Source of the DNA: Mobula birostris
Taxonomy: Eukaryota
Reading direction: 5' to 3'
NCBI RefSeq assembly: GCF_030028105.1
Contig: NC_092383.1
Span: forward strand, 98,417,604 to 98,481,603
DNA length: 64,000 nucleotides
Part shown: positions 2,004-63,084 of the stretch, piece by piece
Layout of the letters: each line of letters begins with the position of its first letter
How positions within the stretch are numbered: the first letter of the stretch is position 1
Translations under genes and position numbers: made by a program
Notes under the pieces: generated by a model
Told to the model about the DNA's origin: nothing
The model's database searches: none
What the model saw: the letters and a program-made list of their open reading frames with translations, nothing else

Positions 2004-8780
<6,777 letters not shown>

Positions 8781-12700: not shown

Positions 12701-15700
12701 TACCAATTCTCCTGAAACTCCTAATTAAATATAGCCACTGTTGTTCCTAGTTTATAATTGCATCAATATGTTGAGCACAGGATGGATCCTCGGGAAATTG
12801 AAACTGCTCACCCCTTCCATTTCTGAACCCCGATGAGCACTGTTGTGTTTTCCCTCGACTTACTCTTCCTGATGTCTGCAATCAGTTCCTTGGTCTTACC
12901 AATGTGGAGTGCAAGGTTGTTGCTGTGATACCACTTAACCAGCTGATCTATCTCACTCCTGTACACGTTCTCGCCACCAACTGAAATTCTGCAAACAATA
13001 ATCGTCACCAACAAATTTATAAATGGCATTTAAGCTGTGCCTAGACACACAGTTGTGAGTATAGAGACTGTGGGTTAAGAACACATGCTTCAGGTGCACT
13101 AATGTTGATTGCCATCATTGGAGATGTGATTTCTAATCCACAAGGACAGCGATCTACTAGTGATTAAGTCAAGGATTCAGTTGCAGCAGTGGGTATGGAG
13201 GCCCAGGTCTTGGAGCTGTTTTCTTTGACTATGCCTTTACTCAAAGTGCATGACCATATACTTCCTTACACTGTATTCCATCTGCCACTTCTTTGACCAT
13301 TCTCATAATTTCTATAGGGAGTTTACTTCCTCCGCACTACCTGCCCCTCCACCTATCTTTGTGTCATCTGCAAACTTAGCCACAGGCCATCAATTCCATC
13401 ATCCTAATCATTGACAGAGAGCATAAAAAGTGGGCTCAATACTGACATCCCTGGAACATCACTAGTCTCAGGCAGCCAAACAGAAAAGGGCACTTTTATT
13501 CCCTTTTTGCCTTCTGCCGGTTAGCCTTTCTATCCATGCTAGTATCATTCCTGTAATACTGTGGTTTCTATCTTGTTTTGCAGTCTCATGTATGTGGCAC
13601 CTTGATAACGGCCTTCTGAAAATCCAATCAAACAAAATCCACTGAACAGCACACACAAAATGCTAGAGGAACTCAGCGGGCCAGGCGACATCTATGGAAA
13701 AGAATAAACAGTCCTCCTGATTAAGGGTCTCAGCCCAAAACATCAACTGTTTACTCTTTTCCACAAATGCTGCCTGAACCGTTGAGTTCCTCCAGCATTC
13801 TGTGTTGCTTGGATTTCCAGCATCTGCAGATTTTTTCGTCAACATCCACTGAATCTCCTTTTCTCTCCTGCCTGTTAATTCCTCAAAGAATTCCAACAGA
13901 TTTGTGAGGCAAGATTTCCCTTTAAGGAAACAATGTGGATTTCAGCCTATTTTATCACGTGTTCCCCAAAACTTCATCCTCAACAATGGACTCTAAAACT
14001 TCACCAATCAGTTAAGTCAGGCTAACTGATCTATGATTTCTTGTATTTTGCCTCAATCCTTTCTTAAAGAGTGGAATTATATTTGCAATTTTCTAGTCCC
14101 CCAGAACCATTCCTGACTCGAGCAATTCTTGAATGATTATTATGAATGCCTCCACAATCTCTTCAGTCACCTTTCAGAACCTTGGGGTGTAGTCCATCTG
14201 GTTCAGATGACTTATCTACCTTTAGACCTTTCAGCTTCCCAAGCACCTTCTCCTTGGTAATAGCAACCACACTCACTTTTGCCTCCCTTTCTCCCACCGA
14301 CTCAAATTTATGGCATATAGCTGGTGACTTTCACAGTGAAGACTTATGCATAGTAGGGACCTGTGAGTCCTTGTACAGAGCTCCCAGAAGGTTATTTCAC
14401 AGGTTGAGTCTGTGGTAAAGAAGGCAAATGCAATGTTGGCATTTATTTCAAGGGGAGTAGAATGTAAAAACAAGGAGATAATGCTGAAGCTTTGAGATAG
14501 TCACCAGGCCATTCTTGGAGTATTTTCAACAGTTTTGGGCTCCTTATCTCTGAAAAGATTGTGTTGTCATTGGTGAGAGTCCAGAGGAGATTTTCTGAGA
14601 ATGAAGGGGCTTACAAATGAGAAGCATCTGGCATCTTTGGGCCTGTACTCACTGGAATTTAGAAGAACGCATAGGGACCTCATTGAAAACTACTGAATAT
14701 TGGAAGAACTAGATAAGGTGAATGTGGAGAGAATGTTTCCTCTGGTGGGGTTATCCTGTACTAAAGGACACAGCTTCAAAATTGAGGAGTGACCTTTTAT
14801 AACAGAAGTAAGGAGGAAGTTTTGTCGCCAAAGAGTGCTGAATCTGTGGAATGCTCTGTCACAGACAATGGTTGAGGCCAAGTCCGTGGGTATATTCAAA
14901 GCGAAGTTGATAGATTAAGGGACATCAAGAGATATGTTTAGAGAGCAGATGTATGTATGGGGTTGAATGAGATCTGGGATTGATCCCATGATGGAATGAC
15001 GGAGCGGGGTTGAATGGAGTGAAGGGCTAAATGGCCTAATTCTGCCCCCATGTCTTATGGTCTTATTATTTATTCAGTTTTTCACCATTTCTTTGTTCCT
15101 CTTTACATCTTCTACAGCATCATTTTCCTTGACTCTATATATCTCTTTTTTTTAAAAAAACCTTGAGTATCCTCTTGTATAATATTTGGCTAATTTGCCT
15201 TTTGACATTTTTTTTTCCATTTTTGCTTTGGTTGTTTCTGTCACTTTTTAAAGTCTTTAATCCTCTGTTTTCCTGTTATTTTTTGTAAAATTCTATGCCC
15301 TCTTTTGCCTTTATGCTGACTTTGACTTCCCTGGTCAGCCATGCTTGCCTCAACCCCCCCCCCCCATGGAATGCTGCTTGTACATTGAGATGCATTTAGG
15401 GTTCTCAGAAACTCTAAGCCATTGCTGCTCTACTGTTATACCTGCTACTGTCCTCCCTCATCTTAGCTGACTTCCATCTTGCAAGACTGGCCAGGATTTG
15501 TGCCTCGGCATCTCTTGGATAGTGAGTTCCATAATCTGGCTCTTTGTTGGGCAACAACCTTCACCTCCACTCTCACCCTCACGAGGGTGGTAGAAGCAGC
15601 CGGAAACCATTTAGCCTTCAAGCTTTTTCCTGTTCCTCTTCAATAAATAGGCTGTCTTTCCATCCTGAGGTCAGAAGTGGGAATACTCACTAGTGATTGC

Positions 15701-21700: not shown

Positions 21701-24123
21701 CCAGTTTACAATCAGGAGAGACCGACTGAAACATGTCGGACTTGTATGGAGAGGATGTTTCAGCTTGTGGGACATTCTGGCACCAGGAATCATTGGCTGA
21801 AAATATGGAGTGGGTGGTTTAAGTGGAAACGAGGCAGTTTTGTTTCTCTCTCTGAGGGTCGTGTACGTTTGGAACCCTCTTCCACGAAGAGGACGGCGTG
21901 GTAGTGTGGTGGTTAGCACAACGCTTTAGAGTATCGGCCGCCTGCGTTCAGTTCCTGCCGCTGTCGGTAAGGGGTTTGAACGTGACCGCGCAGCTTTCCT
22001 CCGGGTGCTCCGGTGTCCTCCCGCAGTCCAAAGACATGCCGGTTGGTAGGTGAATCGGTCATGGTAAATTGTCCCGTGATGAGGCTAGGGTAGAATCGGG
22101 AGCTAATGGTTAGTTGGCACGGCTCGAAGGGCCAGAAACGCCTTTTCCGCGCTGCTTCTCAATAATAAATACAAATGGCTGTGAAGCAGAGATTCTTTAG
22201 ATGATGGAGGTCGAGAGATTCTTCGTGAGAAGAGGCTGAAAGGTCACTGGTGCGAGGTGGAAATGTGGAGATGAGGTTACAGTGTGATCAGTTAGAGTGT
22301 CACGAAGCGTCGTGACCGAGCCTCGTCCTCCAGCTCCCACCGCCACCGCACGCGTTTGTGCATCATCCCTTCTCGCACGGTGACTGGTCTGTTAACTAAT
22401 CTTTTCCCCCACCTTCCTTTCCCATCTCACCCAGGTATTCTGCCAGAAACCCTATCACGTTCCGTTCAGCATACAGGCCTGAAGCTTCATCTCCTTTACT
22501 GCCACAGTACTGTGCCTCAGTGTGTACCATTGCCTTCACATCCACTAGACTCTCGCGCAGCTCCCTGCCATTCCGCATGGCCAGTGTGTTTTCCATCATT
22601 TCTGTCTCTGCCCTCCAAGGACGTGTCCAGTTTCCATATCCCAGTCCTGCTTCTCTCCCTTCTCGGTCTTTGCTCAGTTTCCCATCTCCCTGCCTTGGGT
22701 TTAAACTCTGCCATGGGGCATCAGCAAGCCCGTTCGTAAGGCTAGAAAGGGGCCACAGCCGGTTTGTCTCCGGAACGAGCCCCTTTGTCTAGTGCTGCCG
22801 TTCCTTGCAACAGAATCATCCTCACAATTTTCTCTCTCTGGGCAGCTGGACTGCGTGAGCCTGAGATTTGTTATGTGCTCGATGCGATACTCTTTGTCTA
22901 CGGGACGGTGTTAACGGCTCTGTACTGCCGTCTGAAGGTGAGTTACATTCCCATCAGCAGGGACACAGTCGGCGACACAGGGCGCTGGGGTTGAGGGTAT
23001 ACTGAAAGTTAGTGTGAGGGAGCTAGATTAATACCAATGGGGACACAGGCAGTGACACTGGGTGCTGTGGTTGAGGGACGCTGAAGGATAGTGTGAGGGA
23101 GCTGGATTAATATCAGTGGGACACTGGGTGCTGGGGGAGACGGGTTACTGGGGGACAGTGTGAGGGTATGAAGATGAGTTTCTCATTTGACTAACCTAAT
23201 ATGGGCTTTCGGGACACAATAGCCCAGACACAGAGTGTAAGCTCGGGGAGGGCTCGCTGGAACGAGATATTGGGAACAGTTCTGGGCACCACATTCCTGG
23301 AGTGACGGAGTCATTGGGAGAGGGTGGGGGACGTGAGTAGGGGAGTGAGGTGTTATGAGAATACTTCTGGTATTGGAATACTGTCACTGAGGAGAGATGG
23401 GAGAAGCTGGGGTTGTTTCTTCTGGAATATGGGAGGCAGGGGAAAGAGTGTGTGTGTGGGGGATGTAAAATAGTGAGTGGCTAGTTGGGAAAGAAGGGAA
23501 GGGCACAAACACACATACACAGAACAGACACACAGACACAGACACACAGACAGATACACAGACATACAAACACACACAGACACACACGCAAACACAGATA
23601 CACAGACATACAGACAGACAAACACACACAGATACACAGAACAGACACACAAACACACACAGACAGATACACAGACATACAGACACACAAACACACACAG
23701 ATACACAGAACAGACACACAAACACACACAGACAGATACACAGACATACAGACACACAAACACACACAGATACACAGAACAGACATACAAACACAGACAC
23801 ACAGATACACAGACATACAGACAGACAAACACACACAGATACACAGAACAGACACACAAACACACACAGACACACACGCAAACACAGATACACAGACACA
23901 GAAACACACAGATACACAGAACAGACACACAAACACACACAGACATACAGACACACAAACACAGACACGCAGACACACACACAAACACAGACACACAGAC
24001 AGACAAACACACACACATACAGAGACGTAGAGACAGACAGACAGAAACACACACACCACAGACATACAGACAGAAAGCAACACACAACACACACAACTAC
24101 ACCCCCCCCCAACGCACGCAAAG

Positions 24124-24157
<34 letters not shown>

Positions 24158-27100
24158 ACACACGGTGCGTGTAGGAAGGGTGTTTCCCCAGACTGTGGTG
24201 TCTAAGAAGAACAGTCTCAGAATGAGGTGTGGGCCCCTTCTGGACGGAGATGGGGAGAAATGCAGGGGGAGCATTCTCTCCCCCAGAGGCTGTGGGACTG
24301 CAATACCGAGGAGATTCAGGACAGACATCGCTGAGTATTAAGCAAACTGGGGGAAGGGAGTGGGATTTGTGCAAGAGGTGGTGCCGGGTTACGGATCATT
24401 CGTGGCTTTGTAAATGGAGCGGGGCATTCGTCCTTCCCACAATTACTTTATCTAAAGGGCCAGGCGGTGGGGAAGGTGCAAGGATGTTATACTTGAAAGA
24501 TAATTGAAACCTTTCTCAATCATTCACCGCAGATCTTGGATCGGAGGAAGGAGAAAGCAGCGGCCGGGCAGTCGGAGTACGAGGTTAGGCGGGAGCTGGG
24601 GTGACAGGGAGCGGGAAGGGAGAGCATCACCCGTGGGCAGGTGCTGGGGACGGAGCCCACGGCCCTGCACCGACATGAAATGGGTGGGAGGGTTAATCAA
24701 CTGAATTGGAGAACGGGCTATCCGTGATGTGAGGATGGGGAGAGGCTTTAAACCCTGCATGCCTAGAGGTTTCCTTAATATGTGTTTGTCGCTGTAGCAC
24801 CTGCGCATTGCAGCCACTGATGTCTATGAGGAGCTGAAAGGAGAGAAATCAGCTGGCCCCGGTGGGAAAAAGGTGAGTACTGCTCTGTCCTTGGAGTGTG
24901 TGATGGGATAGTCCAAAGGGAGATTCACTGTGTGTCTGATCCGTGTCCTGGGAGTGTGTGATGAGACAATGTAGGGGGAGATTCACTCTGTGTCTGACCC
25001 GTGTCCTGGGAGTGTGTGATGAGACAGTGCAGTGGGAGTTTCACTGTGTGTTTGACCCGTATCCTGGGAGTGTGTGATGGGACAGTGTAGAGGGAGTTTC
25101 ATTCTGTGTCTGACCCGTGTCCTGGGAGTGTGTGATGGGACAGTGTAGAGGGAGTTTCACTCTGTGTCTGACCTGTGTCCTGGAGTGTGTGATGGGACAG
25201 TGTAGAGCAGGATTCTTAACTTTTATGCCATGAACCCCTTTGCTAGTCCGGTGGATCCTATGTCCTCTTTTCAGAATAATGTATTTAAATATATAAAATA
25301 AAATACATAGAATTACAAAAAAAACGATTATATTAAAATAAAGTTATCAAAATATTAAAAGCACATCTGTGATACAGTAATATATGTCTTTCTTTATTAA
25401 AGCATTAAGTAACAAGACTATGCATTTGAAATATAGCCAGATTAAAATTAAATTTTATTTTTGAAGACATGTCAGTGTGAAGGCTGTTATTGCTTACTGG
25501 AATACGAACATTAAACTGTGGGCTGATCTTCGACAGAGTAACTCGTATGTCATTTTGGATATCCAACCGATTTAGGTTTCTTTTTGTTTTAATGTTTACA
25601 AGTGTTGAAAATCCTGATTCACAAAGATATGTCATTGCAAATGAAATTAAAGCTTCCATGGCTCGCTTTACAAGCCAAGAATAGGCTTCCCTCAAGGAAC
25701 AATTGACTTCTGCAAGGACTTTTGAGTTAAACTCCAATTGTAGTACGCTTTTTGTCCGTAGATCGATAATTTCATCTTTGGCTAGATCAACATCTTCGAT
25801 ACAGTTTACACCAGGAAGTAAAAGACTCCAGGTCTATGGTTGGGCTTCCATGCCATCAGGTTGGAAGTAACTTCTGAAAGAGTTCTGAAATGTTTCCGTG
25901 TCCTCAGACATTTCTTCAAAGGCGTTGACCGCTCCATCTTGGTGAAACACTTCCTCCAACATTTGAAAGTTTGCAAAGATGTTGGCGTCTACTCTCTTCT
26001 TCCATATCAGCAGCATTGCCCAGAACGCTGGTAATTTTTGAGTACCGTGCATAATGGTGGCTTCAGGACTTTGAACTGAAAGATTTATTTCATTCATGTG
26101 GTTAAAAATATCTGTCAGGTCAGCCAACCCACGGATACAATTCTTTGTGTTTCAACTTATTCCAAGAGTGGGTTTTCTTTTTTCAGAAAAGGTGAAGCTT
26201 TTGTCCTTAGTTCGAACAACAGCTTCAATACTTGTTCTTTGGAGAGCCAGCGAATTTCTGTGTGGTGGAGAAGCATTTCATATTCTACACCCATTTCTTG
26301 ACATAGTCTTTTTAAAATGCGATTATTCAGAGACCTGCTTCTAATAAAGTTGATGATGTTTATGGTCGTATTACAAAACTTCTTGCAGGATTGTCGGAAG
26401 AGTCTTTGTTGCCAGTGCATGTCATTGGGGGGCGCTGGAAGCGGACCCAACTGCAAGACACAGACATTGAAGTACTAGGGGCAGGACAAGGTTTATCAAG
26501 AAAGCAAGGGGAGTCAGGAAGAAACGACGCTGTACATGGACACAGGCCCTGGACGAGACTAAGATTCAGGGCCTGGGCTAGTACTTGGGCGAGAAGCACG
26601 GGACCCGGTCGTGGAACTAGGAACAAGGAGCCTGGACTAGGAACACGGAACTCCGGAACCAGAACCTGGGTCTTGACTCGGAACCGGAACCCGGGTCTAG
26701 GCTAGGACTCGGGACTAGGATCGTGGCAAGGACAGGACGTGGCTACAGGACTGGATGTGGAACTCCTGCACAGGACGAGAACACAAAGCCTTGACTTGGA
26801 CAGGACGAGGTTCTAGGACGTGGTTTGGGCTGGACCCCGGATCTAGGCGACGGCAAGACGTGGCTACAGGACAGGACGAGGTACCCCAGCACCGGGCTGG
26901 GCGAGGAACCGGAACGAGATGAGGACACGAAGCTCAGATTTGGACAAGGCTGGAACACAGCGCCTGGATTTGGTCTTGGAACACAGAGCCTTGGACTTGA
27001 ACGGGACGCTCAGAGCCTTGGACGTGGCTACAGGACTGGACGTGGAACATGGACAGGACGAGAACACAAAGCCGTGACCTGGACTGGACGAGGTTCTTGG

Positions 27101-30100
27101 ACGTGGCTTGGACTGGACGAGGGACTCTTGGACTGGACGAGAACACGAAGCCTTGACTTGGACAGGACTGGAACATGGCGCCTGGAACTTGAAACTTGGA
27201 ACACAGAACACAGAGCTGGGACTCCTCCTCGGGAATAGGATTTAGGGCCGGGGCTTTACACAGAGTCAGGGCCCGTCCTTGGGAACAGGACCCAGGACCG
27301 AGACTCTTTTTTGACACGGACACTACACACGGGGACACAAAGAGATAGTTCCAAACTCAACGATAGATAGTTCCTTATCTTGGCGTGGCAAGGCTCTAGT
27401 CTCACTCCGGTGGTTGAACTTGACAGGGATGCAGGCGAGGCTTCAGAAGGAAGGGGAAGGGAACAGTCCGCCGGGAATCCCTGGTTTGAGAGGTATTTAT
27501 GTACCAGCCCAAAACGAGAATCAGGTGCCTCGATTAAGGCACCCAATGGAACAAGGGAAAACAGGGCAAACCCGGAATACGGATCGATGGACGGGACCGT
27601 GAACCGGAGTGCGGATTTCATGGACCGGACCATGACAGTGCATGCCTGTGGAAAAACAATGAGTGACGAATGTGAGGAGCTTCTTTTTTCACTAAAGTAG
27701 CAAAACCATTGGTATTGTCAAGCATCGCAGGAGCTCCATCTTTGCAAAGAGTATGAAGTTTTTCTTTCCAGTCAAAGTTTTGTTTGGCAAATACTTTTTA
27801 CCGTTTCCAAATTCTTCTTTGATGGATTCAGCATGCGCTTAAAGAACAGAAACCAGGCGCTGACTGCATTGAGACATGTCTGTAATTTGATCTAGTTTCA
27901 TGCTGAATGGAACTTCCTCAAAGTCCTGCTTGAAAACGTTGAAATAAATATTAACTATTCTGGAAAGTATTGCGTTATTCGATAAGGGAACCACTTCTAG
28001 TTTCCTCCACACATTCTATCCGCTGTTCCAGTCCACAGACGAGCGCCACCATTTCGGGTGCATATGGCTTTACTACAGTCTATGCAATAGTGTTGGGGCT
28101 TTTTTTGTTTGGCAAGCCGGTAGCAACGTTGTAGGATAGTTCTAGAAAAAAGTTTTGGTGAAATAGTAAATCCAGGTTTGGAAGTGTCTCAACTTTTTCG
28201 AATCGAGTTTCCTTCGTTGGAAATTACCCACATCTTTAGAGGCATTTTCAGCACACCGTGGCTTTTGTGTCCCGTCACGTCCATTAAATCAATGAAACCA
28301 TATAATACCTGTACATAGTTTTTCTCATATTTCCCTTTTTTCGATATTTCACCTTAAATTGGGTTTGCAAAAGTATGACATCAATAAAGTTAAAATAGGA
28401 AATTCGTGTGCCAAATGTTGAAAAAGTTAAGTTTTAGAATTTATCCAAAGTTTGAATACTTTTCATGGATTTTAGATTCTCAGAATAACACAGGACTACG
28501 TGTTCTTCCGGGAATGAGGCTATTATTACGCATGGTTCTCATTTCTTATGTCGTTCGCAGCATTCTCGCGGTTATTTTAGGAAGTGCAGTACTTTCACAG
28601 CGTAATAATACACCAACACCACTTGCATAACACACGGCGCGTGGACGTCTTTACTTGAAAACACGGACAGTGAAAAAAGAAGCAAGTACGGCGAGAAAAC
28701 AAAAGATCCTCTGCTGCCGACAGAATTTACAGCACTGTGCATGACCTGTATCACTTTGCAATCTTTTAGCAATAACAAGACGTTACTTTAAATAACACTC
28801 TTCAGCAGTTACCTCAACCATCAGTCGTGTTTGAACTTGCCTGGGCGGCACTCGTAGCCCACGCGCCAGTTCGTATGACAAAAGGCCGTGCGAACTTTCG
28901 GAGAGTTAAAAAATCTCATTTGTCCTGTAAACACGAGGAATTCTGCAGATGCTGGAATTTCAAGCAACACACATCAAAGTTGCTGGTGAAGGCAGCAGGC
29001 CAGGCAGCATCTCTAGGAAGAGGTGCAGTCGACGTTTCAGGCCGAGACCCTTCGTCAGGACTAACTGAAGGAAGAGTGAGTAAGAGATTTGGAAGTGTGA
29101 GGGGGAGGGGGAGGGATGGAGCCAAGAGCTGGACAGATGATTGGCAAAAGGGATATGAGAGGATCATGGGACAGGAGGCCCAGGGAGAAGGAAAAGGGCG
29201 GGGGGGGGGAACCAGAGGGTGGGCAAGAGGTACATTCAGAGGGACAGAGGGAGAAAAAGGAGAGAGAGAGAAAGAATGTGCGTATATACATAAATAACGG
29301 ATGGGGTACGAGGGGGAGGTTGGGCATTAGCGGAAGTTAGAGATATCAATGTTCATGCCATCAGGTTGGAGGCTACCCAGACGGAATATAAGGTGTTGTT
29401 CCTCCAGCCTGAGTGTGGCTTCATCTTGACAGTAGAGGAGGCCGTGGATAGACATGTCAGAATGGGAATGGGACGTGGAATTAAAATGTGTGGCCACTGG
29501 GAGATCCTGCTTTCTCTGGTGGACACTCCCCCCCCCCCACCCCGCCTTGTCTTTCTCCTTGGGCCTCCTGTCCCATTGATCCTCTCATATCCCTTTTGCC
29601 AATCACCTGTCCAGCTCTTGGCTCCATCCCTCCCCCTCCTGTCTTCTCCTATCATTTTGGATCTCCCCCTCCCCTCCCACTTTCAAATCTCTTACTAGCT
29701 CTTCTTTCAATTGGTCCTGACGAAGGGTCACGTTCCGAAACGTCGACTGTACCTCTGCCTAGAGATGCTGCCTGGCCTGCTGCGGTCACCAGCAACTTTT
29801 ACGTGTGTCATTTGTACTGTACAGTTTTGCAAAAGTAATAAACAATAAAAAAATGACTCACCTCCTTCCACACTTTGATCAACAAACAATTTCAGATAGG
29901 GAATAATAGACAGCAACGTCGGTATCGGGGACACAAATGTGAGAACACGTGATTCACCGTCTGGTGGCGACAGGACTACCAGCCGATAGTTGGTCAGCTA
30001 CTTCGCACGGACGTCTGTGGTCAGGAAGACTGCGATCACGTTCCATCTCGCAGCGTTCTAAAAACTAACATAATGCCGAAGTAGCGATGAGAGTGTAGTA

Positions 30101-31574
30101 AACGATATTTCCCTAAATCTGTAACAACGGTAATATTATATAAAAATATCTGTGATTTCTATTGGTCACCGGTAGTGGTTTGTTGCCAACATTCGTAATT
30201 ATAGGAAATGCTGAGTTTCAGTTAGAGGTTAGTGAAAATAAAATATGTATTTTTTCCATCCAAGTTGAGTACCCTCTGGAATCTATCCCGTACGGATAGT
30301 TTATATCTATCTGATACAATAGGTCAGAGGTCTGATCTAACCCGCGCTCCGGGTGTGTGTGATGGGACAGTGTAGAGGGAGCTTCTCTCTGTGTCTGACC
30401 CGTGTCCTGGGAGTGTGTGACGGGACAGTGTAGAGGGAGTTTCACTCTGTGTCTGACCCGTGTCCTGGGAGTGTGTGATGGGACAGTGTAGAGGGCGTTT
30501 CACTCTGTGTCTGACCTGTGTCCTGGGAGTGTGTGATGCGACAGTGTAGAGGGAGCTTCACTCTGTGTCTGACCCGTGTCCTGGGAGTGTGTGATGGGTC
30601 AGTGTAGAGGGAGTTTCACTCTGTGTCTGACCCGTGTCCTGGGAGTGTGTGATGGGACAGTGTAGAGGGAGCTTCACTCTGTGTCTGATCCGTGTCTTGG
30701 GAGTGTGTGATGGGCCAGTGTAGAGGGAGCTTCACTCTGTGTCTGACCCGTGTCCTGGGAGTGTGTGATGGGACAGTGTAGAGGGAGCTTCAGTCTGTGT
30801 CTGATCCGTGTCTTGGGAGTGTGTGATGGGCCAGTGTAGAGGGAGCTTCACTCTGTGTCTGACCCGTGTCCTGGGAGTGTGTGATGGGGCATGGTTTGTT
30901 GTTACAATAATATTTCTAACGTTTACCCTCCATCTCTTTTCTCTGCAGAAAGAAGAGGGTGTTTACACGGTATGGGCACCTGTTTCTCTACACTCTCCAT
31001 CTTTCCTTCACTTTTTGTTTCTTTCTAGTCTTTCTGTTACTATTTTCCTTTTTCTCTCACTCTTTATTTTTAATTTTGGAAGTCTCGTTCTGTGTTTCCC
31101 ACACTCTTTCTCTCCGTTTAGTCCGTCTCTGCCGGTGTCTCTAAATTTATCTCTAATTCACGCTTTTTCTCAGAGTTGCCCTTCCCAATCTCTCTCCCCA
31201 TCTACCTCTTCCCTCTCTATTTCTCCCTGGTTCTCCCATCCTCTCCCTGTCCCCATGAACCCTCACTCCTCCCTCTTCCTCTCACATTATTTCTTTATTT
31301 TCATCTCTCATTGTCACCCTTTCGCCTTTTCCTCCTCTCCAGCCCGGTGTATCTACCTCGTCTATTTTTCTCACTCCATCTTTCTCACACTCCTCGCTGT
31401 CTCTCCCTCTCTTCCTCTTCACCATCTCTCTCCCTTGCTCCCCTCCTCATTCAGAATCTCCTTTCCTCTCAGTTTATGTGTAACCTCCCTCTCTCTGTCT
31501 GCTTGCAGGGCCTGGGCGAACACCACATTGATACCTATGAATCTCTGCAGCAGAAAGCTCCCAGGAAGATGTAG
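9715..31574 (+). CDS. FCER1G: High-affinity Ig Fc receptor gamma subunit (FcR gamma), 5 exons, 100 aa
   Basis: Exons 9715-9763, 22846-22937, 24798-24872, 30949-30969, 31509-31574 give [102 protein letters not shown] Cys/Asp present; ITAM YTGL-x7-YESL; 49/92/21-nt exon sizes as I recall for human; adjacent to NDUFS2. Confidence 0.95.
11017..11974 (-). mobile_element. Rex1/Babar-like LINE, RT C-terminal part
   Basis: Minus [32 protein letters not shown]; [13 protein letters not shown]; short-repeat tail at ~11017. Confidence 0.82.
12214..13225 (-). mobile_element. Second Rex1/Babar-like LINE fragment inside an antisense CR1
   Basis: Minus [33 protein letters not shown]; tail AGAATCAAGTTTA at the left end. 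Confidence 0.75.
13226..14345 (-). mobile_element. CR1 RT fragment (antisense)
   Basis: Continues the CR1 segment at ~11975-12213; MEFFEELT and QWI/DF..AFD-like remnants. Confidence 0.75.
13647..13843. mobile_element. Penelope-like fold-back insertion, hammerhead core decayed
   Basis: Inverted arms ~13647-13713 / 13744-13807; TSD ATCCACTGAA at 13637-13646 and 13844-13853. Confidence 0.75.
14346..15066 (+). mobile_element. CR1 3' fragment, decayed
   Basis: RT C-terminal remnants; tail TGTCTTATGGTCTTAT. Confidence 0.75.
15775..16265 (+). mobile_element. Old LINE RT C-terminal remnant
   Basis: [24 protein letters not shown], typical of a non-LTR RT C-terminus. Confidence 0.6.
16636..18900 (-). 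mobile_element. hAT (Buster/Charlie-type) transposon remnant with transposase fragments
   Basis: TIR CAGTGGTTCCCAAAC at 16636 preceded by cccTAcac; minus fragments [29 protein letters not shown]-terminal HQAHPSH*; right end not found. Confidence 0.82.
18100..18252 (+). mobile_element. Short CR1 3' end inserted in the hAT
   Basis: Near-identical to 1685-1833. Confidence 0.85.
19060..19610 (+). mobile_element. Rex1/Babar-like LINE 3' fragment
   Basis: [31 protein letters not shown] in shifted frames; tail AATAAACTTGAAC. Confidence 0.72.
20135..21170 (+). mobile_element. 5'-truncated CR1, RT C-terminal half largely intact
   Basis: [26 protein letters not shown]; single stop at 20670-20672. 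Confidence 0.93.
21891..22175 (+). mobile_element. tRNA-derived V-SINE (HE1-like)
   Basis: A-box-like TAGTGTGGTGG 21902, B-box-like GTTCAGTTCC 21946, V-domain TTTCCTCCGGGTGCTCCGGTGTCCTCCCGCAGTCCAAAGAC, A-rich tail. Confidence 0.8.
22846..22937 (+). CDS. FCER1G: FCER1G exon 2 (TM, 92 nt)
   Basis: cag|CT..AAG|gtgag; [27 protein letters not shown]. Confidence 0.97.
23510..24160 (+). repeat. Compound CA-rich microsatellite with ~60-bp higher-order units
   Basis: (CA)n/ACAG/GATA mosaics; GATACACAGAACAGACACACAAACACACACAG recurs. Confidence 0.95.
24798..24872 (+). CDS. FCER1G: FCER1G exon 3 (75 nt)
   Basis: tag|CAC..AAG|gtgagt, phase 0-0; RIAATDVYE aligns with human RKAAITSYE. Confidence 0.82.
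24885..25207 (+). repeat. 58-bp minisatellite array (left half)
   Basis: ~5.5 units starting just after the exon 3 donor. Confidence 0.92.
26420..27637 (-). mobile_element. Solo LTR (TGTCA..TGACA) with 5-bp TSD
   Basis: TSD GTGCA at 26415-26419 and 27638-27642; internal GGAC-rich short repeats. Confidence 0.85.
29026..29063 (-). ncRNA. Minimal type I hammerhead ribozyme motif, intact
   Basis: UAGUC-CUGACGA-AGG(gucucgg)CCU-GAAA-CGUC^GACUG; stem I fully paired; palindromic ACGU stem III. Confidence 0.75.
29712..29749 (+). ncRNA. Minimal type I hammerhead ribozyme motif, core intact, sense to FCER1G
   Basis: UGGUC-CUGACGA-A GGG(ucacgu)UCC-GAAA-CGUC^GACUG; stems pair with G-U wobbles. Confidence 0.7.
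30335..30888 (+). repeat. 58-bp minisatellite array (right half, ~9 units)
   Basis: Same unit and orientation as 24885-25207; ends ~60 nt before exon 4. Confidence 0.93.
30949..30969 (+). CDS. FCER1G: FCER1G exon 4 (21 nt)
   Basis: Long pyrimidine tract, cag|AAA..ACG|gtatg; KEEGVYT (human KSDGVYT). Confidence 0.92.
31509..31574 (+). CDS. FCER1G: FCER1G exon 5 (66 nt incl. TAG)
   Basis: cag|GGC CTG..ATG TAG; [21 protein letters not shown]. Confidence 0.93.
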   Translation, partial: GLGEHHIDTYESLQQKAPRKM

Positions 31575-32072: not shown

Positions 32073-32170
32073 ATACACAAAATGTTGAAGCAACTGAGCA
32101 GGCCAGGGGCATCTATGGAAAAGAGTAAACAGTCGACGTTTCAGGCCGAGACCCTTCATCTACAGGACCG
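32073..32170 (-). mobile_element. Short antisense Penelope-like terminal fragment
   Basis: ACACAAAATGTTG..GTCGACGTTTCAGGCCGAGACCCTTCATC; hammerhead core has a 3-nt insertion. Confidence 0.7.
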
Positions 32171-59199: not shown

Positions 59200-60170
59200 G
59201 CTGGAACAACGCAAAGATGCTGCGGGAGGAACTCAGCAGGTCGAGCAGCCTCTGTGAGGGGTGGTGGGTGTGTGTGTGCGGGGGGGGGGGGGTGGAAGAG
59301 GAGCTGTCATTGTTTCTGGTGGAAACCAGATCTGAAAGTGGAGAGGGAAGACAGCCAAACGAGAAGGGAGTGGTGAGACAGGAGCCGGAATTGGGAATGT
59401 GAGATGACAGGCAGGTTGTACCAGGTAAGGGAGGGGAGTGGAAGGCAGGGGTGGGTGGGTGATCGATGCAAGCAGACAAAGAGAGGAGCAGAACTAAAGG
59501 TAGAGAGAGCAAGGTGGTAGGAGGGAGGGAGGGAGGGAGAAGCTCAGAGATTGCTGCTGGAGGGAGAGAACCAGGAACTCAAAGATCTGCCAGTGCCAGA
59601 CTTCATAAGACACAGGAGCAGAATTCGGCCATTCAGCCCGTGAGTCTGCTCTGCCTCTTCACCATGGTTGAGTAATCAGGACTGATAAGTCGGCATGAAT
59701 ATGGAGACAGGAGTAGGGCACATGGAACCAGGCAGGGATTGGGTGAGGGGAGAGTGTCTCAGCGATCCTTTGGGTGAGCTGAGGTGTGTGTGTGTATTTA
59801 TGAATGGAAGCAGAAAGGAAAGGTGAAGGGGGCGAAAAATGTGAGGACCTGGGGAGGATTAGAAGGAACAGGCTGGGGGAGGGAACGGAATTTTACTCAA
59901 AAGTGGACAATTCAGTGTTCCTACCACTGGCTTGTAGACCACCCATGTGGAATTGAGGGGATGTTCCTCCAGCCTCTGTCGGGCCTCACCCTGTCAGTGG
60001 GACAGGCGTGGATGTACAGGTCAGTGTGGGGATGGGGGAATGGGAGCTGGAATGGTCGGTATCTGGAAGCATGGGATGGCCTTTGTGGACCAAGCATAGG
60101 TTTTCTGTGAAATACTCCTCAGGTCTGTGTTCGGATCTGTTGGTGTAGAGAAGGCGACCTCGGGAGCACT
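59200..60170 (-). mobile_element. Old Penelope-like remnants, with a small CR1 tail at ~59600-59680
   Basis: GAGGAACTCAGCAGGTCGAGCAGC terminal motif; degenerate match to the GIY-YIG segment at 29340-29460. Confidence 0.55.
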
Positions 60171-60486
60171 GTTCAGGGAGTGTTAAGGTGCCTCCACAAC
60201 ACATGGAATATCAAAGTTCAAAGTAAATTTATTATCAAAGTGCATGTGTCTCCATATACAACCTTGGGCATACTCATATAACCTACAGAGTAATAACCAT
60301 AACAGAATCAATGAAAGACAGCCCAGCTGTAGGAAGATGGCGCTGGTAAACCATAGTGACTTTCTGTGGGCTGTGGACAATACTTCTACATTTAGCTCTG
60401 GTCACCTCATTATGGGAAGGATGTGGAAGATTTAGAGAGGGTGCAGAGGAGATTTACCAGAATGCTGCCTGGATTAGAGAGCATGT

Positions 60487-61058
60487 CCTCGTTCCCCCTC
60501 GCCCTGTTTCTTCACTCCCTCACTCCCTCCTCCTCCCCTTCTCTCTTCCTCAATCCTCTCCCATACCTCCCCCTCCACCCTCTGCTGCTTCTCCCACCCC
60601 CTCCTTCTCCCCTCCGCCCTCTCCCCTTTCCCCATCTTTCCCCTCCCACACCCTCCTTCTCACCCTCCCACTCCCTTCCCCTTCCCTGTCCTCTGCTCTT
60701 CCCCTCCTTCTCCATTCCCCTTCCCTCAACCCCTCCCTCTCCCCTCCCCTTCCCTCAAATCCTCCCTTCCCTTTCTCTCCCCCCCCCCACCTCTCCCCTT
60801 CCCTGGCTCCCTAACTTCCCTTCCTTTTTTCTCTCCTCTACCCCTCCCTTACCCCCACACCCTCCCCTCCCTTCTCCCGTCTCCCCACTCCTTCTCTGTC
60901 TCTACTTCCCCCTTCTCCCGGTTCCTCTCTCCCCTCTCCCTCCATTCAATCGTTCCCCTCCAACTCTCACCTCCCTCTCTCCCCTCTATCCCTCCCCTCT
61001 CCCCTCTCACCTCTCCCCCCCTTCCCTACCCCCCTCTACCCCAGCCTCCCCCCCCCCC
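60487..61058. repeat. Polypyrimidine/polypurine low-complexity tract
   Basis: ~570 nt almost only C/T on the + strand. Confidence 0.92.
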
Positions 61059-61370
61059 CGGTGCCCCTGGACAACACTCCCGGGCGGGGTTGTTCTCTTG
61101 CCGGAGCGTCTCTCTGCGTTGCCGCCTCCCGTATCTCTGGTGATAGGCGCACCGCTCTACACTCGCTCTCTGCTGGAGCCTTCACGGTCCTAGCCCGGGC
61201 GAACGGAGGCGGCCGATCACAGGATCCCGCAGGAGTCCACCGGCTGGGCTCCGATCACCGTCACGGAGCAAGTGAGAGTCCGCAGCTGGTTAACGGATCA
61301 CCGTCACGGAGCGAAGATGAAGCCCTTCCTGGTTGCGCTGCTTTTGTCGGAGGAAGCCAGGGTGAGTTAC
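61059..61370 (+). promoter_or_regulatory. CpG island / probable promoter and first exon of an unidentified gene
   Basis: Dense CpG, GGGCGG box at ~61083, non-repetitive sequence, consensus donor CAGG|GTGAGT at 61361/61362. Confidence 0.65.
61317..61361 (+). CDS. Candidate first coding exon MKPFLVALLLSEEAR (unidentified gene)
   Basis: gaagATGa, 45 nt, phase-0 donor; no downstream exon found in the window; could be 5' UTR. Confidence 0.4.
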
Positions 61371-61374
61371 TGTT

Positions 61375-62375
61375 GCTTCCCCTTCCCCACACGCCCCTAC
61401 GCTACTCCGTACCTGCCCCTATTCTTCACCGTCCCGGGCCCTTCCCCTTCCCCAGTCCGTCCCCACCCTACACCGACCCGGGCCCTTCCCCTTCCCCACT
61501 CCGTCCCCACCCTACACCGTCCCGGACCCTTCCCCTTCCCCACTCCGTCCCCACCCTACACCGTCCCGGGCCCTTCCCCTTCCCCACTCCATCCCACCCT
61601 ACACCGTCCCGGGCCCTTCCCCTTCCCGTTCCCCTTCCCTACTCCGTCCCCATCCTACACCACCCCGGGCCCTTCCCCTTCCCCACTCCGTCCCCACGCT
61701 ACTCCATCCCGGGCCCTTCCCCTTCCCCACTCCGTCCCCACCCTACACTGTCCCGGACCCTTCCCTTTCCCCACTCCGTCCCCACCCTACACCGTCCTGG
61801 GCCCTTCCCCTTCCCTTTCCCCTTCCCCTTCCCCACTCCGACCCCACCCTATACCATCCTGGGCCCTTCCCCTTCCCCTTCCCCACTCTGTCCCCACCCT
61901 ACACCGTCCCGGGCCCTTCCACTTCCCCACTCCAACCCCACCCTACACCGTCCTGGGCCCTTCCCCTTCTCCTGCCCCCCTCCGTCCCCATCCTACACCG
62001 TCCCGGGTCCTTCCCCTTCCCCACTCCATCCGACCCTACACCGTCCCGGGTCCTTCCCCTTCCCCACTCCATCCGACCCTACACCGTCCCGGGCCCTTCC
62101 CCTTCCCCACTCCATCCCACCCTACACCGTCCCGGGCCCTTCCCCTTCCCCACTCCATCCCACCCTACACTGTCCCGGGCCCTTCCCCTTCCCCTTCCCC
62201 CCTCTGTCCCCACCCTACTCTGTCCTGGGCCCTTCCCCTTCCCCTTCCCGACTCCGACCCACCCTACACCGTCCCGGGCCCTTCCCCTTCCCCACTCCGA
62301 CCCATCCTACACCGTCCCGGGCCCTTCCCCTTCCCCACTCCATCCCCACCCTACACCGTCCTGAGCCCTTCCCCT
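61375..62375 (+). repeat. C-rich ~43-50-bp minisatellite (~22 units)
   Basis: Unit CACCGTCCCGGGCCCTTCCCCTTCCCCACTCCRTCCCCACCCTA with variable CTTCCC copy number. Confidence 0.95.
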
Positions 62376-63084
62376 TCCTGTTCCCTACATTATCTCTGCT
62401 CTTCTCTCCCTCCGCTCCTTCCCCCGTTCTACAACCGTCCCTGTCCCTCCTCTAAGTCTCCTGGTACCCGGACCACCACCAGAGCCCGGTCCCGAAACTT
62501 GTCGGCCCTAATACCCACCAACTCCGAGGACACCCACCCCTCCCCAGCTACCGAGGAACAAGCTGTGGGATCGCCATCAGATTCTGGCCCTGAATACCGT
62601 CTGTACCCCTTGGGACGGCTCAGGTCATGCTGATCCATGGTGATTCACTGCTGAACGTCCCGCCTGTTATTGCAGCCTCAGCCCCGATAGAGTCATACAG
62701 CTCTGAAAAAGGCCCTTTGACCCAACTGGTCCATGCTGACCACAGCACACTCTCTGCTTGTCCCAGTGCCTGTGACCCTCCAAGACCCTCCATGTACCTA
62801 TCCACATGCCCCTTTCTGTTGCAATGGTACTCGCCTGAACTGCTGTTCATTCTATCCTGATGGAGTCAGCCCCCACTCACCTCCAAGGACACCTGTATTC
62901 CTCTCTGCCACTCTGACAGCTTCTACCCTCCAGAGCTGTGTGGGGAAGGAGTCCTGGGGTTTAGAGCCAGAGGTGACGAGGGACCTGCGATATACTTTAA
63001 GGTCAGCTGTGGAATTTGTTAGTGAGCCTCTGGGAGCTTCCCTGAGTTCCCTGCCCCTGACCACCAGAGTGGCTGTCAAAGCAA

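What the first reader, a model, noticed from the sequence alone, without database searches (positions are those of the whole stretch)
28916..29821. Intronic fold-back Penelope insertion with intact hammerhead cores on both strands of FCER1G intron 3
Seen: one 878-bp insertion (14-bp TSD, 1 mismatch) made of two outward-facing terminal-repeat arms (~28968-29210 vs ~29529-29807) around a GIY-YIG remnant. Each arm keeps CUGACGA-stem II-GAAA-CGUC^ with a paired stem I (29026-29063 minus; 29712-29749 plus). Known: PLEs carry minimal type I hammerheads whose palindromic short stem III (here ACGU) is thought to need dimerisation. Inference: the plus copy is transcribed in the FCER1G pre-mRNA, and the antisense arm in the same RNA can pair with it over ~240 bp. 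That could act as a cis-antisense lock on a self-cleaving element and as an ADAR/dsRNA substrate in an immune signalling gene.
Basis: partly seen in the sequence, partly recalled or inferred. Interest (0 to 1): 0.75.

Follow-up and report, generated by a model that had tools for sequence, protein, structure and literature searches.

The report
Dead head-to-head Penelope retrotransposon insertion
This is an old, broken copy of a very common Penelope-like jumping gene sitting in an intron of a ray's Fc-receptor gamma gene; its mirror-image shape and its two small hammerhead ribozyme motifs are the standard marks of this element, and nothing points to a role in the host gene.

Summary
There is an 878-bp insertion (28930-29807) between 14-bp target-site duplications that match at 13 of 14 positions. 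It has two outward-facing arms of about 245 aligned bases, 90% identical. Each arm carries a minimal type-I hammerhead core, CUGACGA-A-helix II-GAAACGUC.

Four corrections:
- The endonuclease-like ORF remnant lies on the minus strand. The left, minus-sense copy is therefore the main 5'-truncated copy, and it carries a 37-nt "tail". The right arm is the inverted, shorter copy.
- The host intron is intron 4 of a six-exon gene, not intron 3.
- The plus-strand hammerhead, the only one in sense in the pre-mRNA, has the weakest helix II of the seven copies in the window.
- No Rfam hammerhead model matches either motif.

Published descriptions of Penelope-like elements cover every feature seen: an inverted 5'-truncated partner, a 30-40 bp tail at one end, and minimal hammerheads that are inactive as monomers. 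A second such stub lies at 5619-5817. This scan had already noted many of these elements elsewhere in the same genome.

The plus-strand RNA should fold into a long hairpin that buries the hammerhead. That "lock" acts on a motif expected to be inert anyway. Verdict: ordinary, low interest.

The parts
28916..28929 (.). Left target-site duplication (14 bp)
   Evidence: Read directly; matches 29808-29821 at 13 of 14 positions
28930..28966 (-). 37-nt 'tail': 3'-terminal extension present only on the main (minus-sense) copy
   Evidence: It is absent from the right arm, whose last base aligns with 28967. The same extension is seen in copies at 5623 and 13839. It matches the published 30-40 bp tail (PMC8557442; PMC11167929)
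28967..29209 (-). Left arm: 3' non-coding region of the main copy, repeated in inverted form on the right
   Evidence: Inverted repeats I1-I3; blastn against itself; alignment
29026..29063 (-). Minimal hammerhead motif, minus strand: helix I 5 bp, CUGACGA, bulged A, helix II of 4 bp with G10.1-U11.1, GAAA, ACGU, C17
29210..29326 (-). Unduplicated 3' UTR stretch of the main copy, between the stop codon and the arm
   Evidence: It lies between the ORF stop at 29327-29329 and the inner end of the arm
29327..29525 (-). C-terminal ORF remnant of the element (endonuclease-like end of the polyprotein) on the minus strand. The open frame is 29497-29327 including the stop. The 5'-truncation point is near 29525
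   Evidence: Open frame on the minus strand. Pfam gives nothing. The nearest ESM Atlas clusters are SegE-type GIY-YIG endonucleases, score 0.95 (a lead only). A decayed relative lies at 59912-60036
29526..29807 (+). Right arm: inverted, more severely 5'-truncated partner copy without a tail. It holds 32 extra bases (29639-29670) relative to the left arm
29712..29749 (+). Minimal hammerhead motif, plus strand (sense in the host pre-mRNA): core intact and G10.1-C11.1 kept, but helix II reduced to 3 bp (G-C, G-C, G-U, then a U-U mismatch)
29808..29821 (.). Right target-site duplication (14 bp)
24798..24872 (+). Host exon upstream of the intron (75 nt, second half of the first ITAM)
   Evidence: AG/GT borders and an open frame on the plus strand
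30949..30969 (+). Host exon downstream of the intron (21 nt, KEEGVYT)
   Evidence: Strong polypyrimidine tract, AG/GT borders, phase 0, and ends in Y-x before the GL of the last exon; inferred from sequence only
31509..31574 (+). Last host coding exon ([21 protein letters not shown], then stop)
   Evidence: inferred from sequence only

Best explanation
The feature is a single, old, dead insertion of an endonuclease-bearing Penelope-like retrotransposon (PLE). It landed in the 6.1-kb intron between the 75-nt and 21-nt exons of the ray FcR gamma gene. The inferred mechanism is that the element's endonuclease made a staggered double nick 14 bp apart and both free DNA ends primed reverse transcription of element RNA from its 3' end. 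This left two 5'-truncated copies head-to-head with their 3' ends facing outward. The minus-sense copy is about 596 nt: ORF end, 3' UTR, hammerhead and 37-nt tail. The plus-sense copy is about 282 nt with no tail. The two hammerhead motifs are the family's usual minimal type-I motifs, carried in because they lie about 60-100 nt from the element's 3' end. Since insertion the copies have drifted to about 10% difference. In the host pre-mRNA the insert is expected to fold into a long imperfect hairpin that is spliced out and degraded with the intron. The single sense hammerhead is not expected to cleave.

Shown: the anatomy, the intron position, the predicted hairpin, and the weakened helix II. 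Inferred: the double-priming mechanism, the lack of cleavage, and the lack of host function.
For: - TSD of 14 bp and the insert borders.
- Outward-facing arms.
- A minus-strand ORF end with a stop codon, followed by the arm, with GIY-YIG endonucleases as nearest Atlas clusters.
- A tail at one end only.
- A second head-to-head stub at 5619-5817 with a perfect 14-bp TSD and the same tail asymmetry.
- Three further solo stubs, all starting at the upstream edge of the hammerhead.
- PMC8557442 describes an inverted 5'-truncated copy and a 30-40 bp tail, often at one end only, as typical of PLEs.
- PMC11167929 shows that a PLE protein cleaves and extends both DNA strands, that the tail is the stretch between two RT start sites, and that no RNA-seq reads end at the hammerhead site.
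- PMC4209133 describes minimal hammerheads with a bulged base after A9, G10.1-C11.1 and a palindromic 15.2-16.2; they are inactive as monomers.
- Arm divergence of 9.8% predicts 1.4 mismatches in the 14-bp TSD; 1 is seen.
Against: - No reverse-transcriptase sequence is present in this copy, so the PLE assignment rests on the terminal region, the motif and the architecture.
- Pfam does not recognise the 70-aa ORF remnant.
- Four of the 24 arm mismatches fall in the 12-nt helix II. This could mean that two slightly different template RNAs were used rather than decay alone.
- All three CpGs of each hammerhead core have survived although other copies in the window have lost some. With this sample that cannot be told apart from chance.
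- No RNA data were obtained, so lack of cleavage and lack of host effect are inferred.
Confidence: 0.87

Rival explanations
1. The intronic hairpin is a working double-stranded RNA element. In the FcR gamma pre-mRNA the roughly 240-bp duplex is edited by ADAR, diced, or sensed, and this tunes expression or splicing of an immune signalling gene.
For: The plus-strand insert folds at -555 kcal/mol, z = -33.7. It has 227 arm-to-arm pairs, 9 of them G-U, and uninterrupted helices of up to 32 bp. It lies fully inside one transcribed intron.
Against: Passive editing of such a hairpin is plausible, but that is not a function. Both arms sit in one intron, so the hairpin cannot bridge exons. The arms decay at about the rate of the TSD. 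The same architecture arises at every PLE integration of this type and is abundant in this genome. No reads could be examined.
Confidence: 0.06
2. The plus-strand hammerhead is catalytically active and cleaves the FcR gamma pre-mRNA after C29744, either alone or by pairing in trans with another copy's ACGU.
For: All conserved core positions are present, G10.1-C11.1 is kept, and helix I can form 5 bp.
Against: - Helix III is only a 4-nt palindrome, and minimal PLE hammerheads showed no monomer cleavage and only weak dimer cleavage (PMC4209133).
- Helix II is down to 3 bp, -0.6 kcal/mol.
- The monomer's lowest-energy fold pairs GACG of the core with CGUC.
- In context, 35 of 38 nucleotides are buried in the hairpin, with about 65 kcal/mol needed to free them.
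- No Rfam hammerhead hit.
- In Anolis no reads end at the PLE hammerhead site (PMC11167929).
Confidence: 0.03
3. The 878-bp unit is a self-contained non-autonomous fold-back element, retrozyme-like or MITE-like, that moves as a whole rather than arising at integration.
For: Terminal inverted repeats plus a TSD resemble a fold-back transposon, and a second palindromic unit lies at 5619-5817.
Against: The two units differ in size (878 against about 199 bp) and in their inner break points. This one contains a coding remnant on one side only. The arms are unequal, with the tail and 5' extent differing. There are no tandem direct hammerhead repeats as in retrozymes.
Confidence: 0.03

Closest known systems
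Endonuclease-bearing Penelope-like elements (Penelope/Poseidon-type) with an inverted 5'-truncated partner copy and a one-sided tail (Craig et al. 2021, PMC8557442; Anolis PAc study 2024, PMC11167929)
   Same: Outward-facing inverted copies joined at their truncated 5' ends, a 37-nt tail at one end only, a hammerhead in the terminal repeat, a TSD, and the ORF ending in an endonuclease-like segment
   Different: This copy keeps no RT and only about 55-65 codons of the ORF end. The TSD is a fixed 14 bp at both insertions in this window
Minimal PLE hammerhead ribozymes (Cervera and de la Pena 2014, PMC4209133)
   Same: Type-I topology, CUGANGA...GAAA...UC core, an unpaired base between A9 and G10.1, no loop 3, palindromic ACGU in place of helix III, and helix I of 4-5 bp
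   Different: Helix II is short here (3-4 bp with U-G or U-U pairs) against the 7-8 bp described for Schistosoma. The minus copy has G10.1-U11.1 instead of G-C
Inverted-repeat retroelement pairs in introns as ADAR substrates (for example inverted Alu pairs in primates; from general knowledge)
   Same: Two copies of one retroelement in opposite orientation inside one intron, predicted to form a long imperfect duplex
   Different: Here both arms come from one integration event, and no editing data are available for this locus
Animal non-LTR retrozymes (tandem hammerhead repeats derived from PLE terminal repeats; bioRxiv 10.64898/2026.07.22.740005)
   Same: They share the PLE-type hammerhead
   Different: Retrozymes are direct tandem repeats that allow dimeric hammerheads and circular RNAs, and they are reported to be depleted from introns. 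This is an inverted pair in an intron

Membership tests
Penelope-like element (EN+ clades) | Reverse transcriptase domain of the PLE/telomerase-related type | tested here: not met
   The copy is 5'-truncated near 29525. Only the last 55-65 codons of an ORF remain, so no RT sequence is present in this insert
Penelope-like element (EN+ clades) | C-terminal GIY-YIG endonuclease | tested here: inconclusive
   Pfam finds no family in the 70-aa remnant. The nearest ESM Atlas clusters are SegE GIY-YIG endonucleases at 0.95 with 175 shared features, which is a lead and not an alignment
Penelope-like element (EN+ clades) | Terminal repeat carrying a hammerhead motif | tested here: met
   Motifs at 29063-29026 (-) and 29712-29749 (+), about 60-100 nt from each outer end
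Penelope-like element (EN+ clades) | Inverted 5'-truncated copy adjoining the main copy | tested here: met
   described in PMC8557442
Penelope-like element (EN+ clades) | 30-40 bp tail, often at one end only | tested here: met
   37 nt at 28930-28966, absent from the right end
Minimal PLE hammerhead (min-HHR) | Conserved core CUGANGA, GAAA and a U-H cleavage site | tested here: met
   Both arms
Minimal PLE hammerhead (min-HHR) | [quoted passage not shown] | tested here: met
   An A follows CUGACGA in all seven copies in the window
Minimal PLE hammerhead (min-HHR) | G10.1-C11.1 base pair | tested here: inconclusive
   The plus copy has G-C and the minus copy has G-U. Across seven copies, G-U occurs 4 times and G-C 3 times
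Minimal PLE hammerhead (min-HHR) | Palindromic 15.2-16.2 with no loop 3 | tested here: met
   ACGU directly precedes C17 in both arms
Minimal PLE hammerhead (min-HHR) | Self-cleavage, at least as a dimer | not testable with these tools
   Needs in vitro transcription and cleavage assays. Published relatives cleave weakly and only as dimers
Rfam hammerhead families (type I, II, III, HH9, HH10) | Match to the covariance model | tested here: not met
   No hit at E<=10 on 3 kb or on 91-nt slices, and none at gathering score in the whole window. This is expected for a motif without a helix III hairpin
Non-LTR retrozyme | Direct tandem repeats, each with a hammerhead | tested here: not met
   The only direct repeat found in 28700-30100 is one weak 27-nt pair, and the two hammerheads are on opposite strands

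The most novel reading that the evidence does not exclude
The hairpin made by this one-event inverted pair is edited by ADAR or diced in ray leukocytes. On this reading, head-to-head PLE stubs in introns are for cartilaginous fish what inverted Alu pairs are for primates: the main source of self double-stranded RNA. The FcR gamma intron would then be one testable case.
Probability: 0.12. Interest if true: 0.35.

Novelty: already known. Interest (0 to 1): 0.1.

Why it matters
It matters little for this locus. It is a clean textbook example of PLE integration: double priming, a one-sided tail, a 14-bp TSD and minimal hammerheads. It also fixes the intron numbering of the ray FcR gamma gene. The one open point of wider interest applies to the whole genome rather than to this insertion: whether the many head-to-head PLE stubs in introns of this genome form edited double-stranded RNA.

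Tried and rejected
- Rfam covariance models were run on 3 kb, on 91-nt slices of each arm and on the whole window. There was no hammerhead hit; the only low-scoring hits (mir-1290, IMES-5, PrrB/RsmZ) are chance matches.
- Single-motif MFE folds are no better than shuffles, z about +0.3, and do not adopt the hammerhead shape.
- Pair counts over seven local copies show no compensatory change. The sample is too small and too similar to say anything.
- Pfam on the 70-aa ORF remnant was blank.
- Pfam on three minus-strand ORF pieces at 25405-26456, said by another note to be a hAT transposase, was blank at E<=0.01. Nesting inside a hAT element is therefore not confirmed here.
Expression, editing and RNA ends remain untested.
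- No consensus of the element was built or used.

Full report
**Observation.** The sequence shows a 14-bp duplication at 28916-28929 and 29808-29821, matching at 13 of 14 positions. It brackets an 878-bp insert at 28930-29807. The repeat finder reports three collinear inverted-repeat blocks: 28967-29110 with 29665-29808 (87%), 29104-29166 with 29577-29639 (98%), and 29166-29209 with 29533-29576 (86%). A gapped alignment of the two arms in sense orientation gives 245 aligned positions, of which 221 are identical (90.2%). There are 14 transitions, 10 transversions, and indels of 4, 1 and 32 nt; the 32-nt block is 29639-29670 in the right arm. The hammerhead core pattern CTGANGA-N8-20-GAAACGTC occurs three times in the window, at 29058-29031 on the minus strand, 29717-29744 on the plus strand and 7102-7129 on the plus strand. 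None were expected in 100 dinucleotide-preserving shuffles.

**Orientation and make-up.** The central "GIY-YIG remnant" is not on the plus strand. The only coherent frame is on the minus strand, 29497-29327. It ends in a stop codon and runs straight into the left arm. Pfam does not recognise the 70-residue piece. The ESM Atlas places it nearest to SegE-type GIY-YIG endonuclease clusters, with a score of 0.95 and 175 shared features; this is a lead, not proof. A decayed relative of the same piece lies at 59912-60036.

The insert is therefore made of two parts:
- A minus-sense main copy of about 596 nt, containing the ORF end, 3' UTR, hammerhead, and a 37-nt terminal extension at 28930-28966.
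- A plus-sense partner of about 282 nt that stops 37 nt short of the element's end.

The two are joined at their truncated 5' ends near 29525, with their 3' ends facing outward.

**Other copies in the window.** blastn finds five more pieces of the same terminal region. The pair at 5619-5817 is another head-to-head insertion. Both of its arms are cut inside the CUGA box, it is flanked by a perfect 14-bp duplication, and it again has the extension on one arm only. The stubs at 7098-7165, 13715-13839 and 32097-32160 all begin at the upstream edge of the hammerhead.

**The hammerheads.** Both motifs have the layout helix I, CUGACGA, an unpaired A, helix II, GAAA, then ACGU and C17 with no loop 3. 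This is the minimal hammerhead that Cervera and de la Pena defined for PLE terminal repeats: a bulged base between positions 9 and 10.1, a G10.1-C11.1 pair, and a palindromic 15.2-16.2. That paper reports no detectable cleavage as a monomer and low cleavage as dimers or trimers (PMC4209133).
- Helix I can form 5 bp in both arms.
- Helix II of the minus copy is 4 bp with G10.1-U11.1, at -2.3 kcal/mol.
- Helix II of the plus copy keeps G10.1-C11.1 but is down to G-C, G-C, G-U followed by a U-U mismatch, at -0.6 kcal/mol.
- The copy at 7102 gives -3.9 kcal/mol.
- Among the seven local copies, the plus-strand copy of this insert is the only one with an unpaired helix II position.
- The seven copies show no compensatory changes, so they give no covariation evidence either way.
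- Single motifs do not fold better than shuffles.
- The lowest-energy monomer fold pairs GACG of the core with CGUC at the cleavage site.
- No Rfam hammerhead model matches on 3 kb, on 91-nt slices, or at gathering score over the whole window.

**Host gene.** The 75-nt exon at 24798-24872 has AG/GT borders and an open frame on the plus strand. Upstream lie a transmembrane exon near 22869 and a 51-nt exon that completes a first ITAM across the splice junction. Downstream I find a 21-nt exon at 30949-30969 (KEEGVYT), with a strong polypyrimidine tract and in phase 0. The last coding exon is at 31509-31574 and begins with GL, so that a second ITAM is formed. These exons are inferred from sequence only. 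The insert therefore lies in the 6.1-kb intron 24873-30948. That is intron 4 of a six-exon gene, not intron 3. It is transcribed with the right arm in sense.

**RNA folding in context.** The plus-strand insert folds into one long hairpin of -555 kcal/mol, with z = -33.7 against shuffles. It has 227 arm-to-arm pairs, 9 of them G-U, in 15 helices of up to 32 uninterrupted pairs. Of the 38 hammerhead nucleotides, 35 are paired, and forcing them single-stranded costs about 65 kcal/mol. The antisense arm is transcribed first. However, the pre-mRNA holds only one sense hammerhead with an intact core in this insertion, and I found no second intact sense copy between the TM exon (about 22869) and the stop codon at 31574. 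The motif has no helix III of its own and a damaged helix II, so there is nothing to lock.

**Mechanism.** Craig et al. describe an inverted 5'-truncated copy next to the main copy, and a 30-40 bp tail often present at only one end, as typical of PLE insertions (PMC8557442). The Anolis PAc study shows three relevant things (PMC11167929):
- The purified PLE protein cleaves and extends both DNA strands.
- The tail is the stretch between two adjacent reverse-transcription start sites.
- No RNA-seq reads begin or end at the hammerhead site.

Priming from both nicked strands explains two copies with outward-facing 3' ends. The two alternative start sites explain why one arm has the 37-nt tail and the other does not. 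That this mechanism produced this particular insert is inference. Arm divergence of 9.8% predicts 1.4 mismatches in a 14-bp TSD, and 1 is seen. This fits one old event followed by neutral decay.

**What could not be done.** Transcription of the intron, A-to-I editing and RNA ends therefore remain untested. Pfam did not confirm a neighbouring note that the surrounding 5 kb is a hAT element.

**Earlier notes of this scan.** The scan has already recorded many Penelope hammerhead observations in this same ray genome: 59 notes hold both words. They include head-to-head stubs in titin introns that were judged to be normal integration products, short stubs that begin at the hammerhead, and a constant 14-bp TSD. 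My two loci agree with those notes, and I reached the same reading from this window's own sequence.

**Verdict.** This is an ordinary, decayed, head-to-head Penelope-like insertion of a kind already described. The description is confirmed with four corrections. The functional reading is unsupported for the hammerhead and untested and generic for double-stranded RNA.

Noticed in passing
window 5604-5832: A second head-to-head Penelope stub of about 199 bp. Both arms are cut inside the CUGA box and joined with 2 nt between them. It is flanked by a perfect 14-bp duplication (GTATCATTAGCTGA) and has the terminal tail on the left arm only. The arms differ at the hammerhead CpGs (ACGT has become ATGT in one and ACAT in the other).
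   Followed up: partly
window 7098-7165, 13715-13839, 32097-32160: Three solo 3'-terminal Penelope stubs that all start within a few bases of the upstream edge of the hammerhead motif. The one at 32097-32160 is antisense and lies about 520 nt after the FcR gamma stop codon, possibly in the 3' UTR. An N run (7308-7451) lies about 140 nt beyond the stub at 7098-7165 and was left alone.
   Followed up: partly
window 22869-31574: FcR gamma exon layout read from sequence: a TM exon near 22869, a 51-nt exon about 220 nt upstream of 24798, a 75-nt exon at 24798-24872, a 21-nt exon at 30949-30969, and a last exon at 31509-31574. Both ITAMs are split across exon junctions (YE|HL and YT|GL).
   Followed up: partly
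window 25405-26456 (minus strand): Three consecutive minus-strand ORF pieces that another note calls a hAT transposase. Pfam found nothing at E<=0.01, so whether the Penelope insert is nested in a hAT element remains open.
   Followed up: partly
window 60356-62633: Long plus-strand open frames (up to 464 aa) made of proline-rich repeats (PGPFPFPTPS.. and PSPSPL.. units). This looks like a tandem-repeat tract rather than a gene.
   Followed up: no
window 29639-29670: A 32-nt block is present in the right arm and absent from the left. It is bordered by CTCCCCCT-like runs, so it is probably a slippage deletion or duplication after insertion. It makes the one large bulge in the predicted hairpin.
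   Followed up: no
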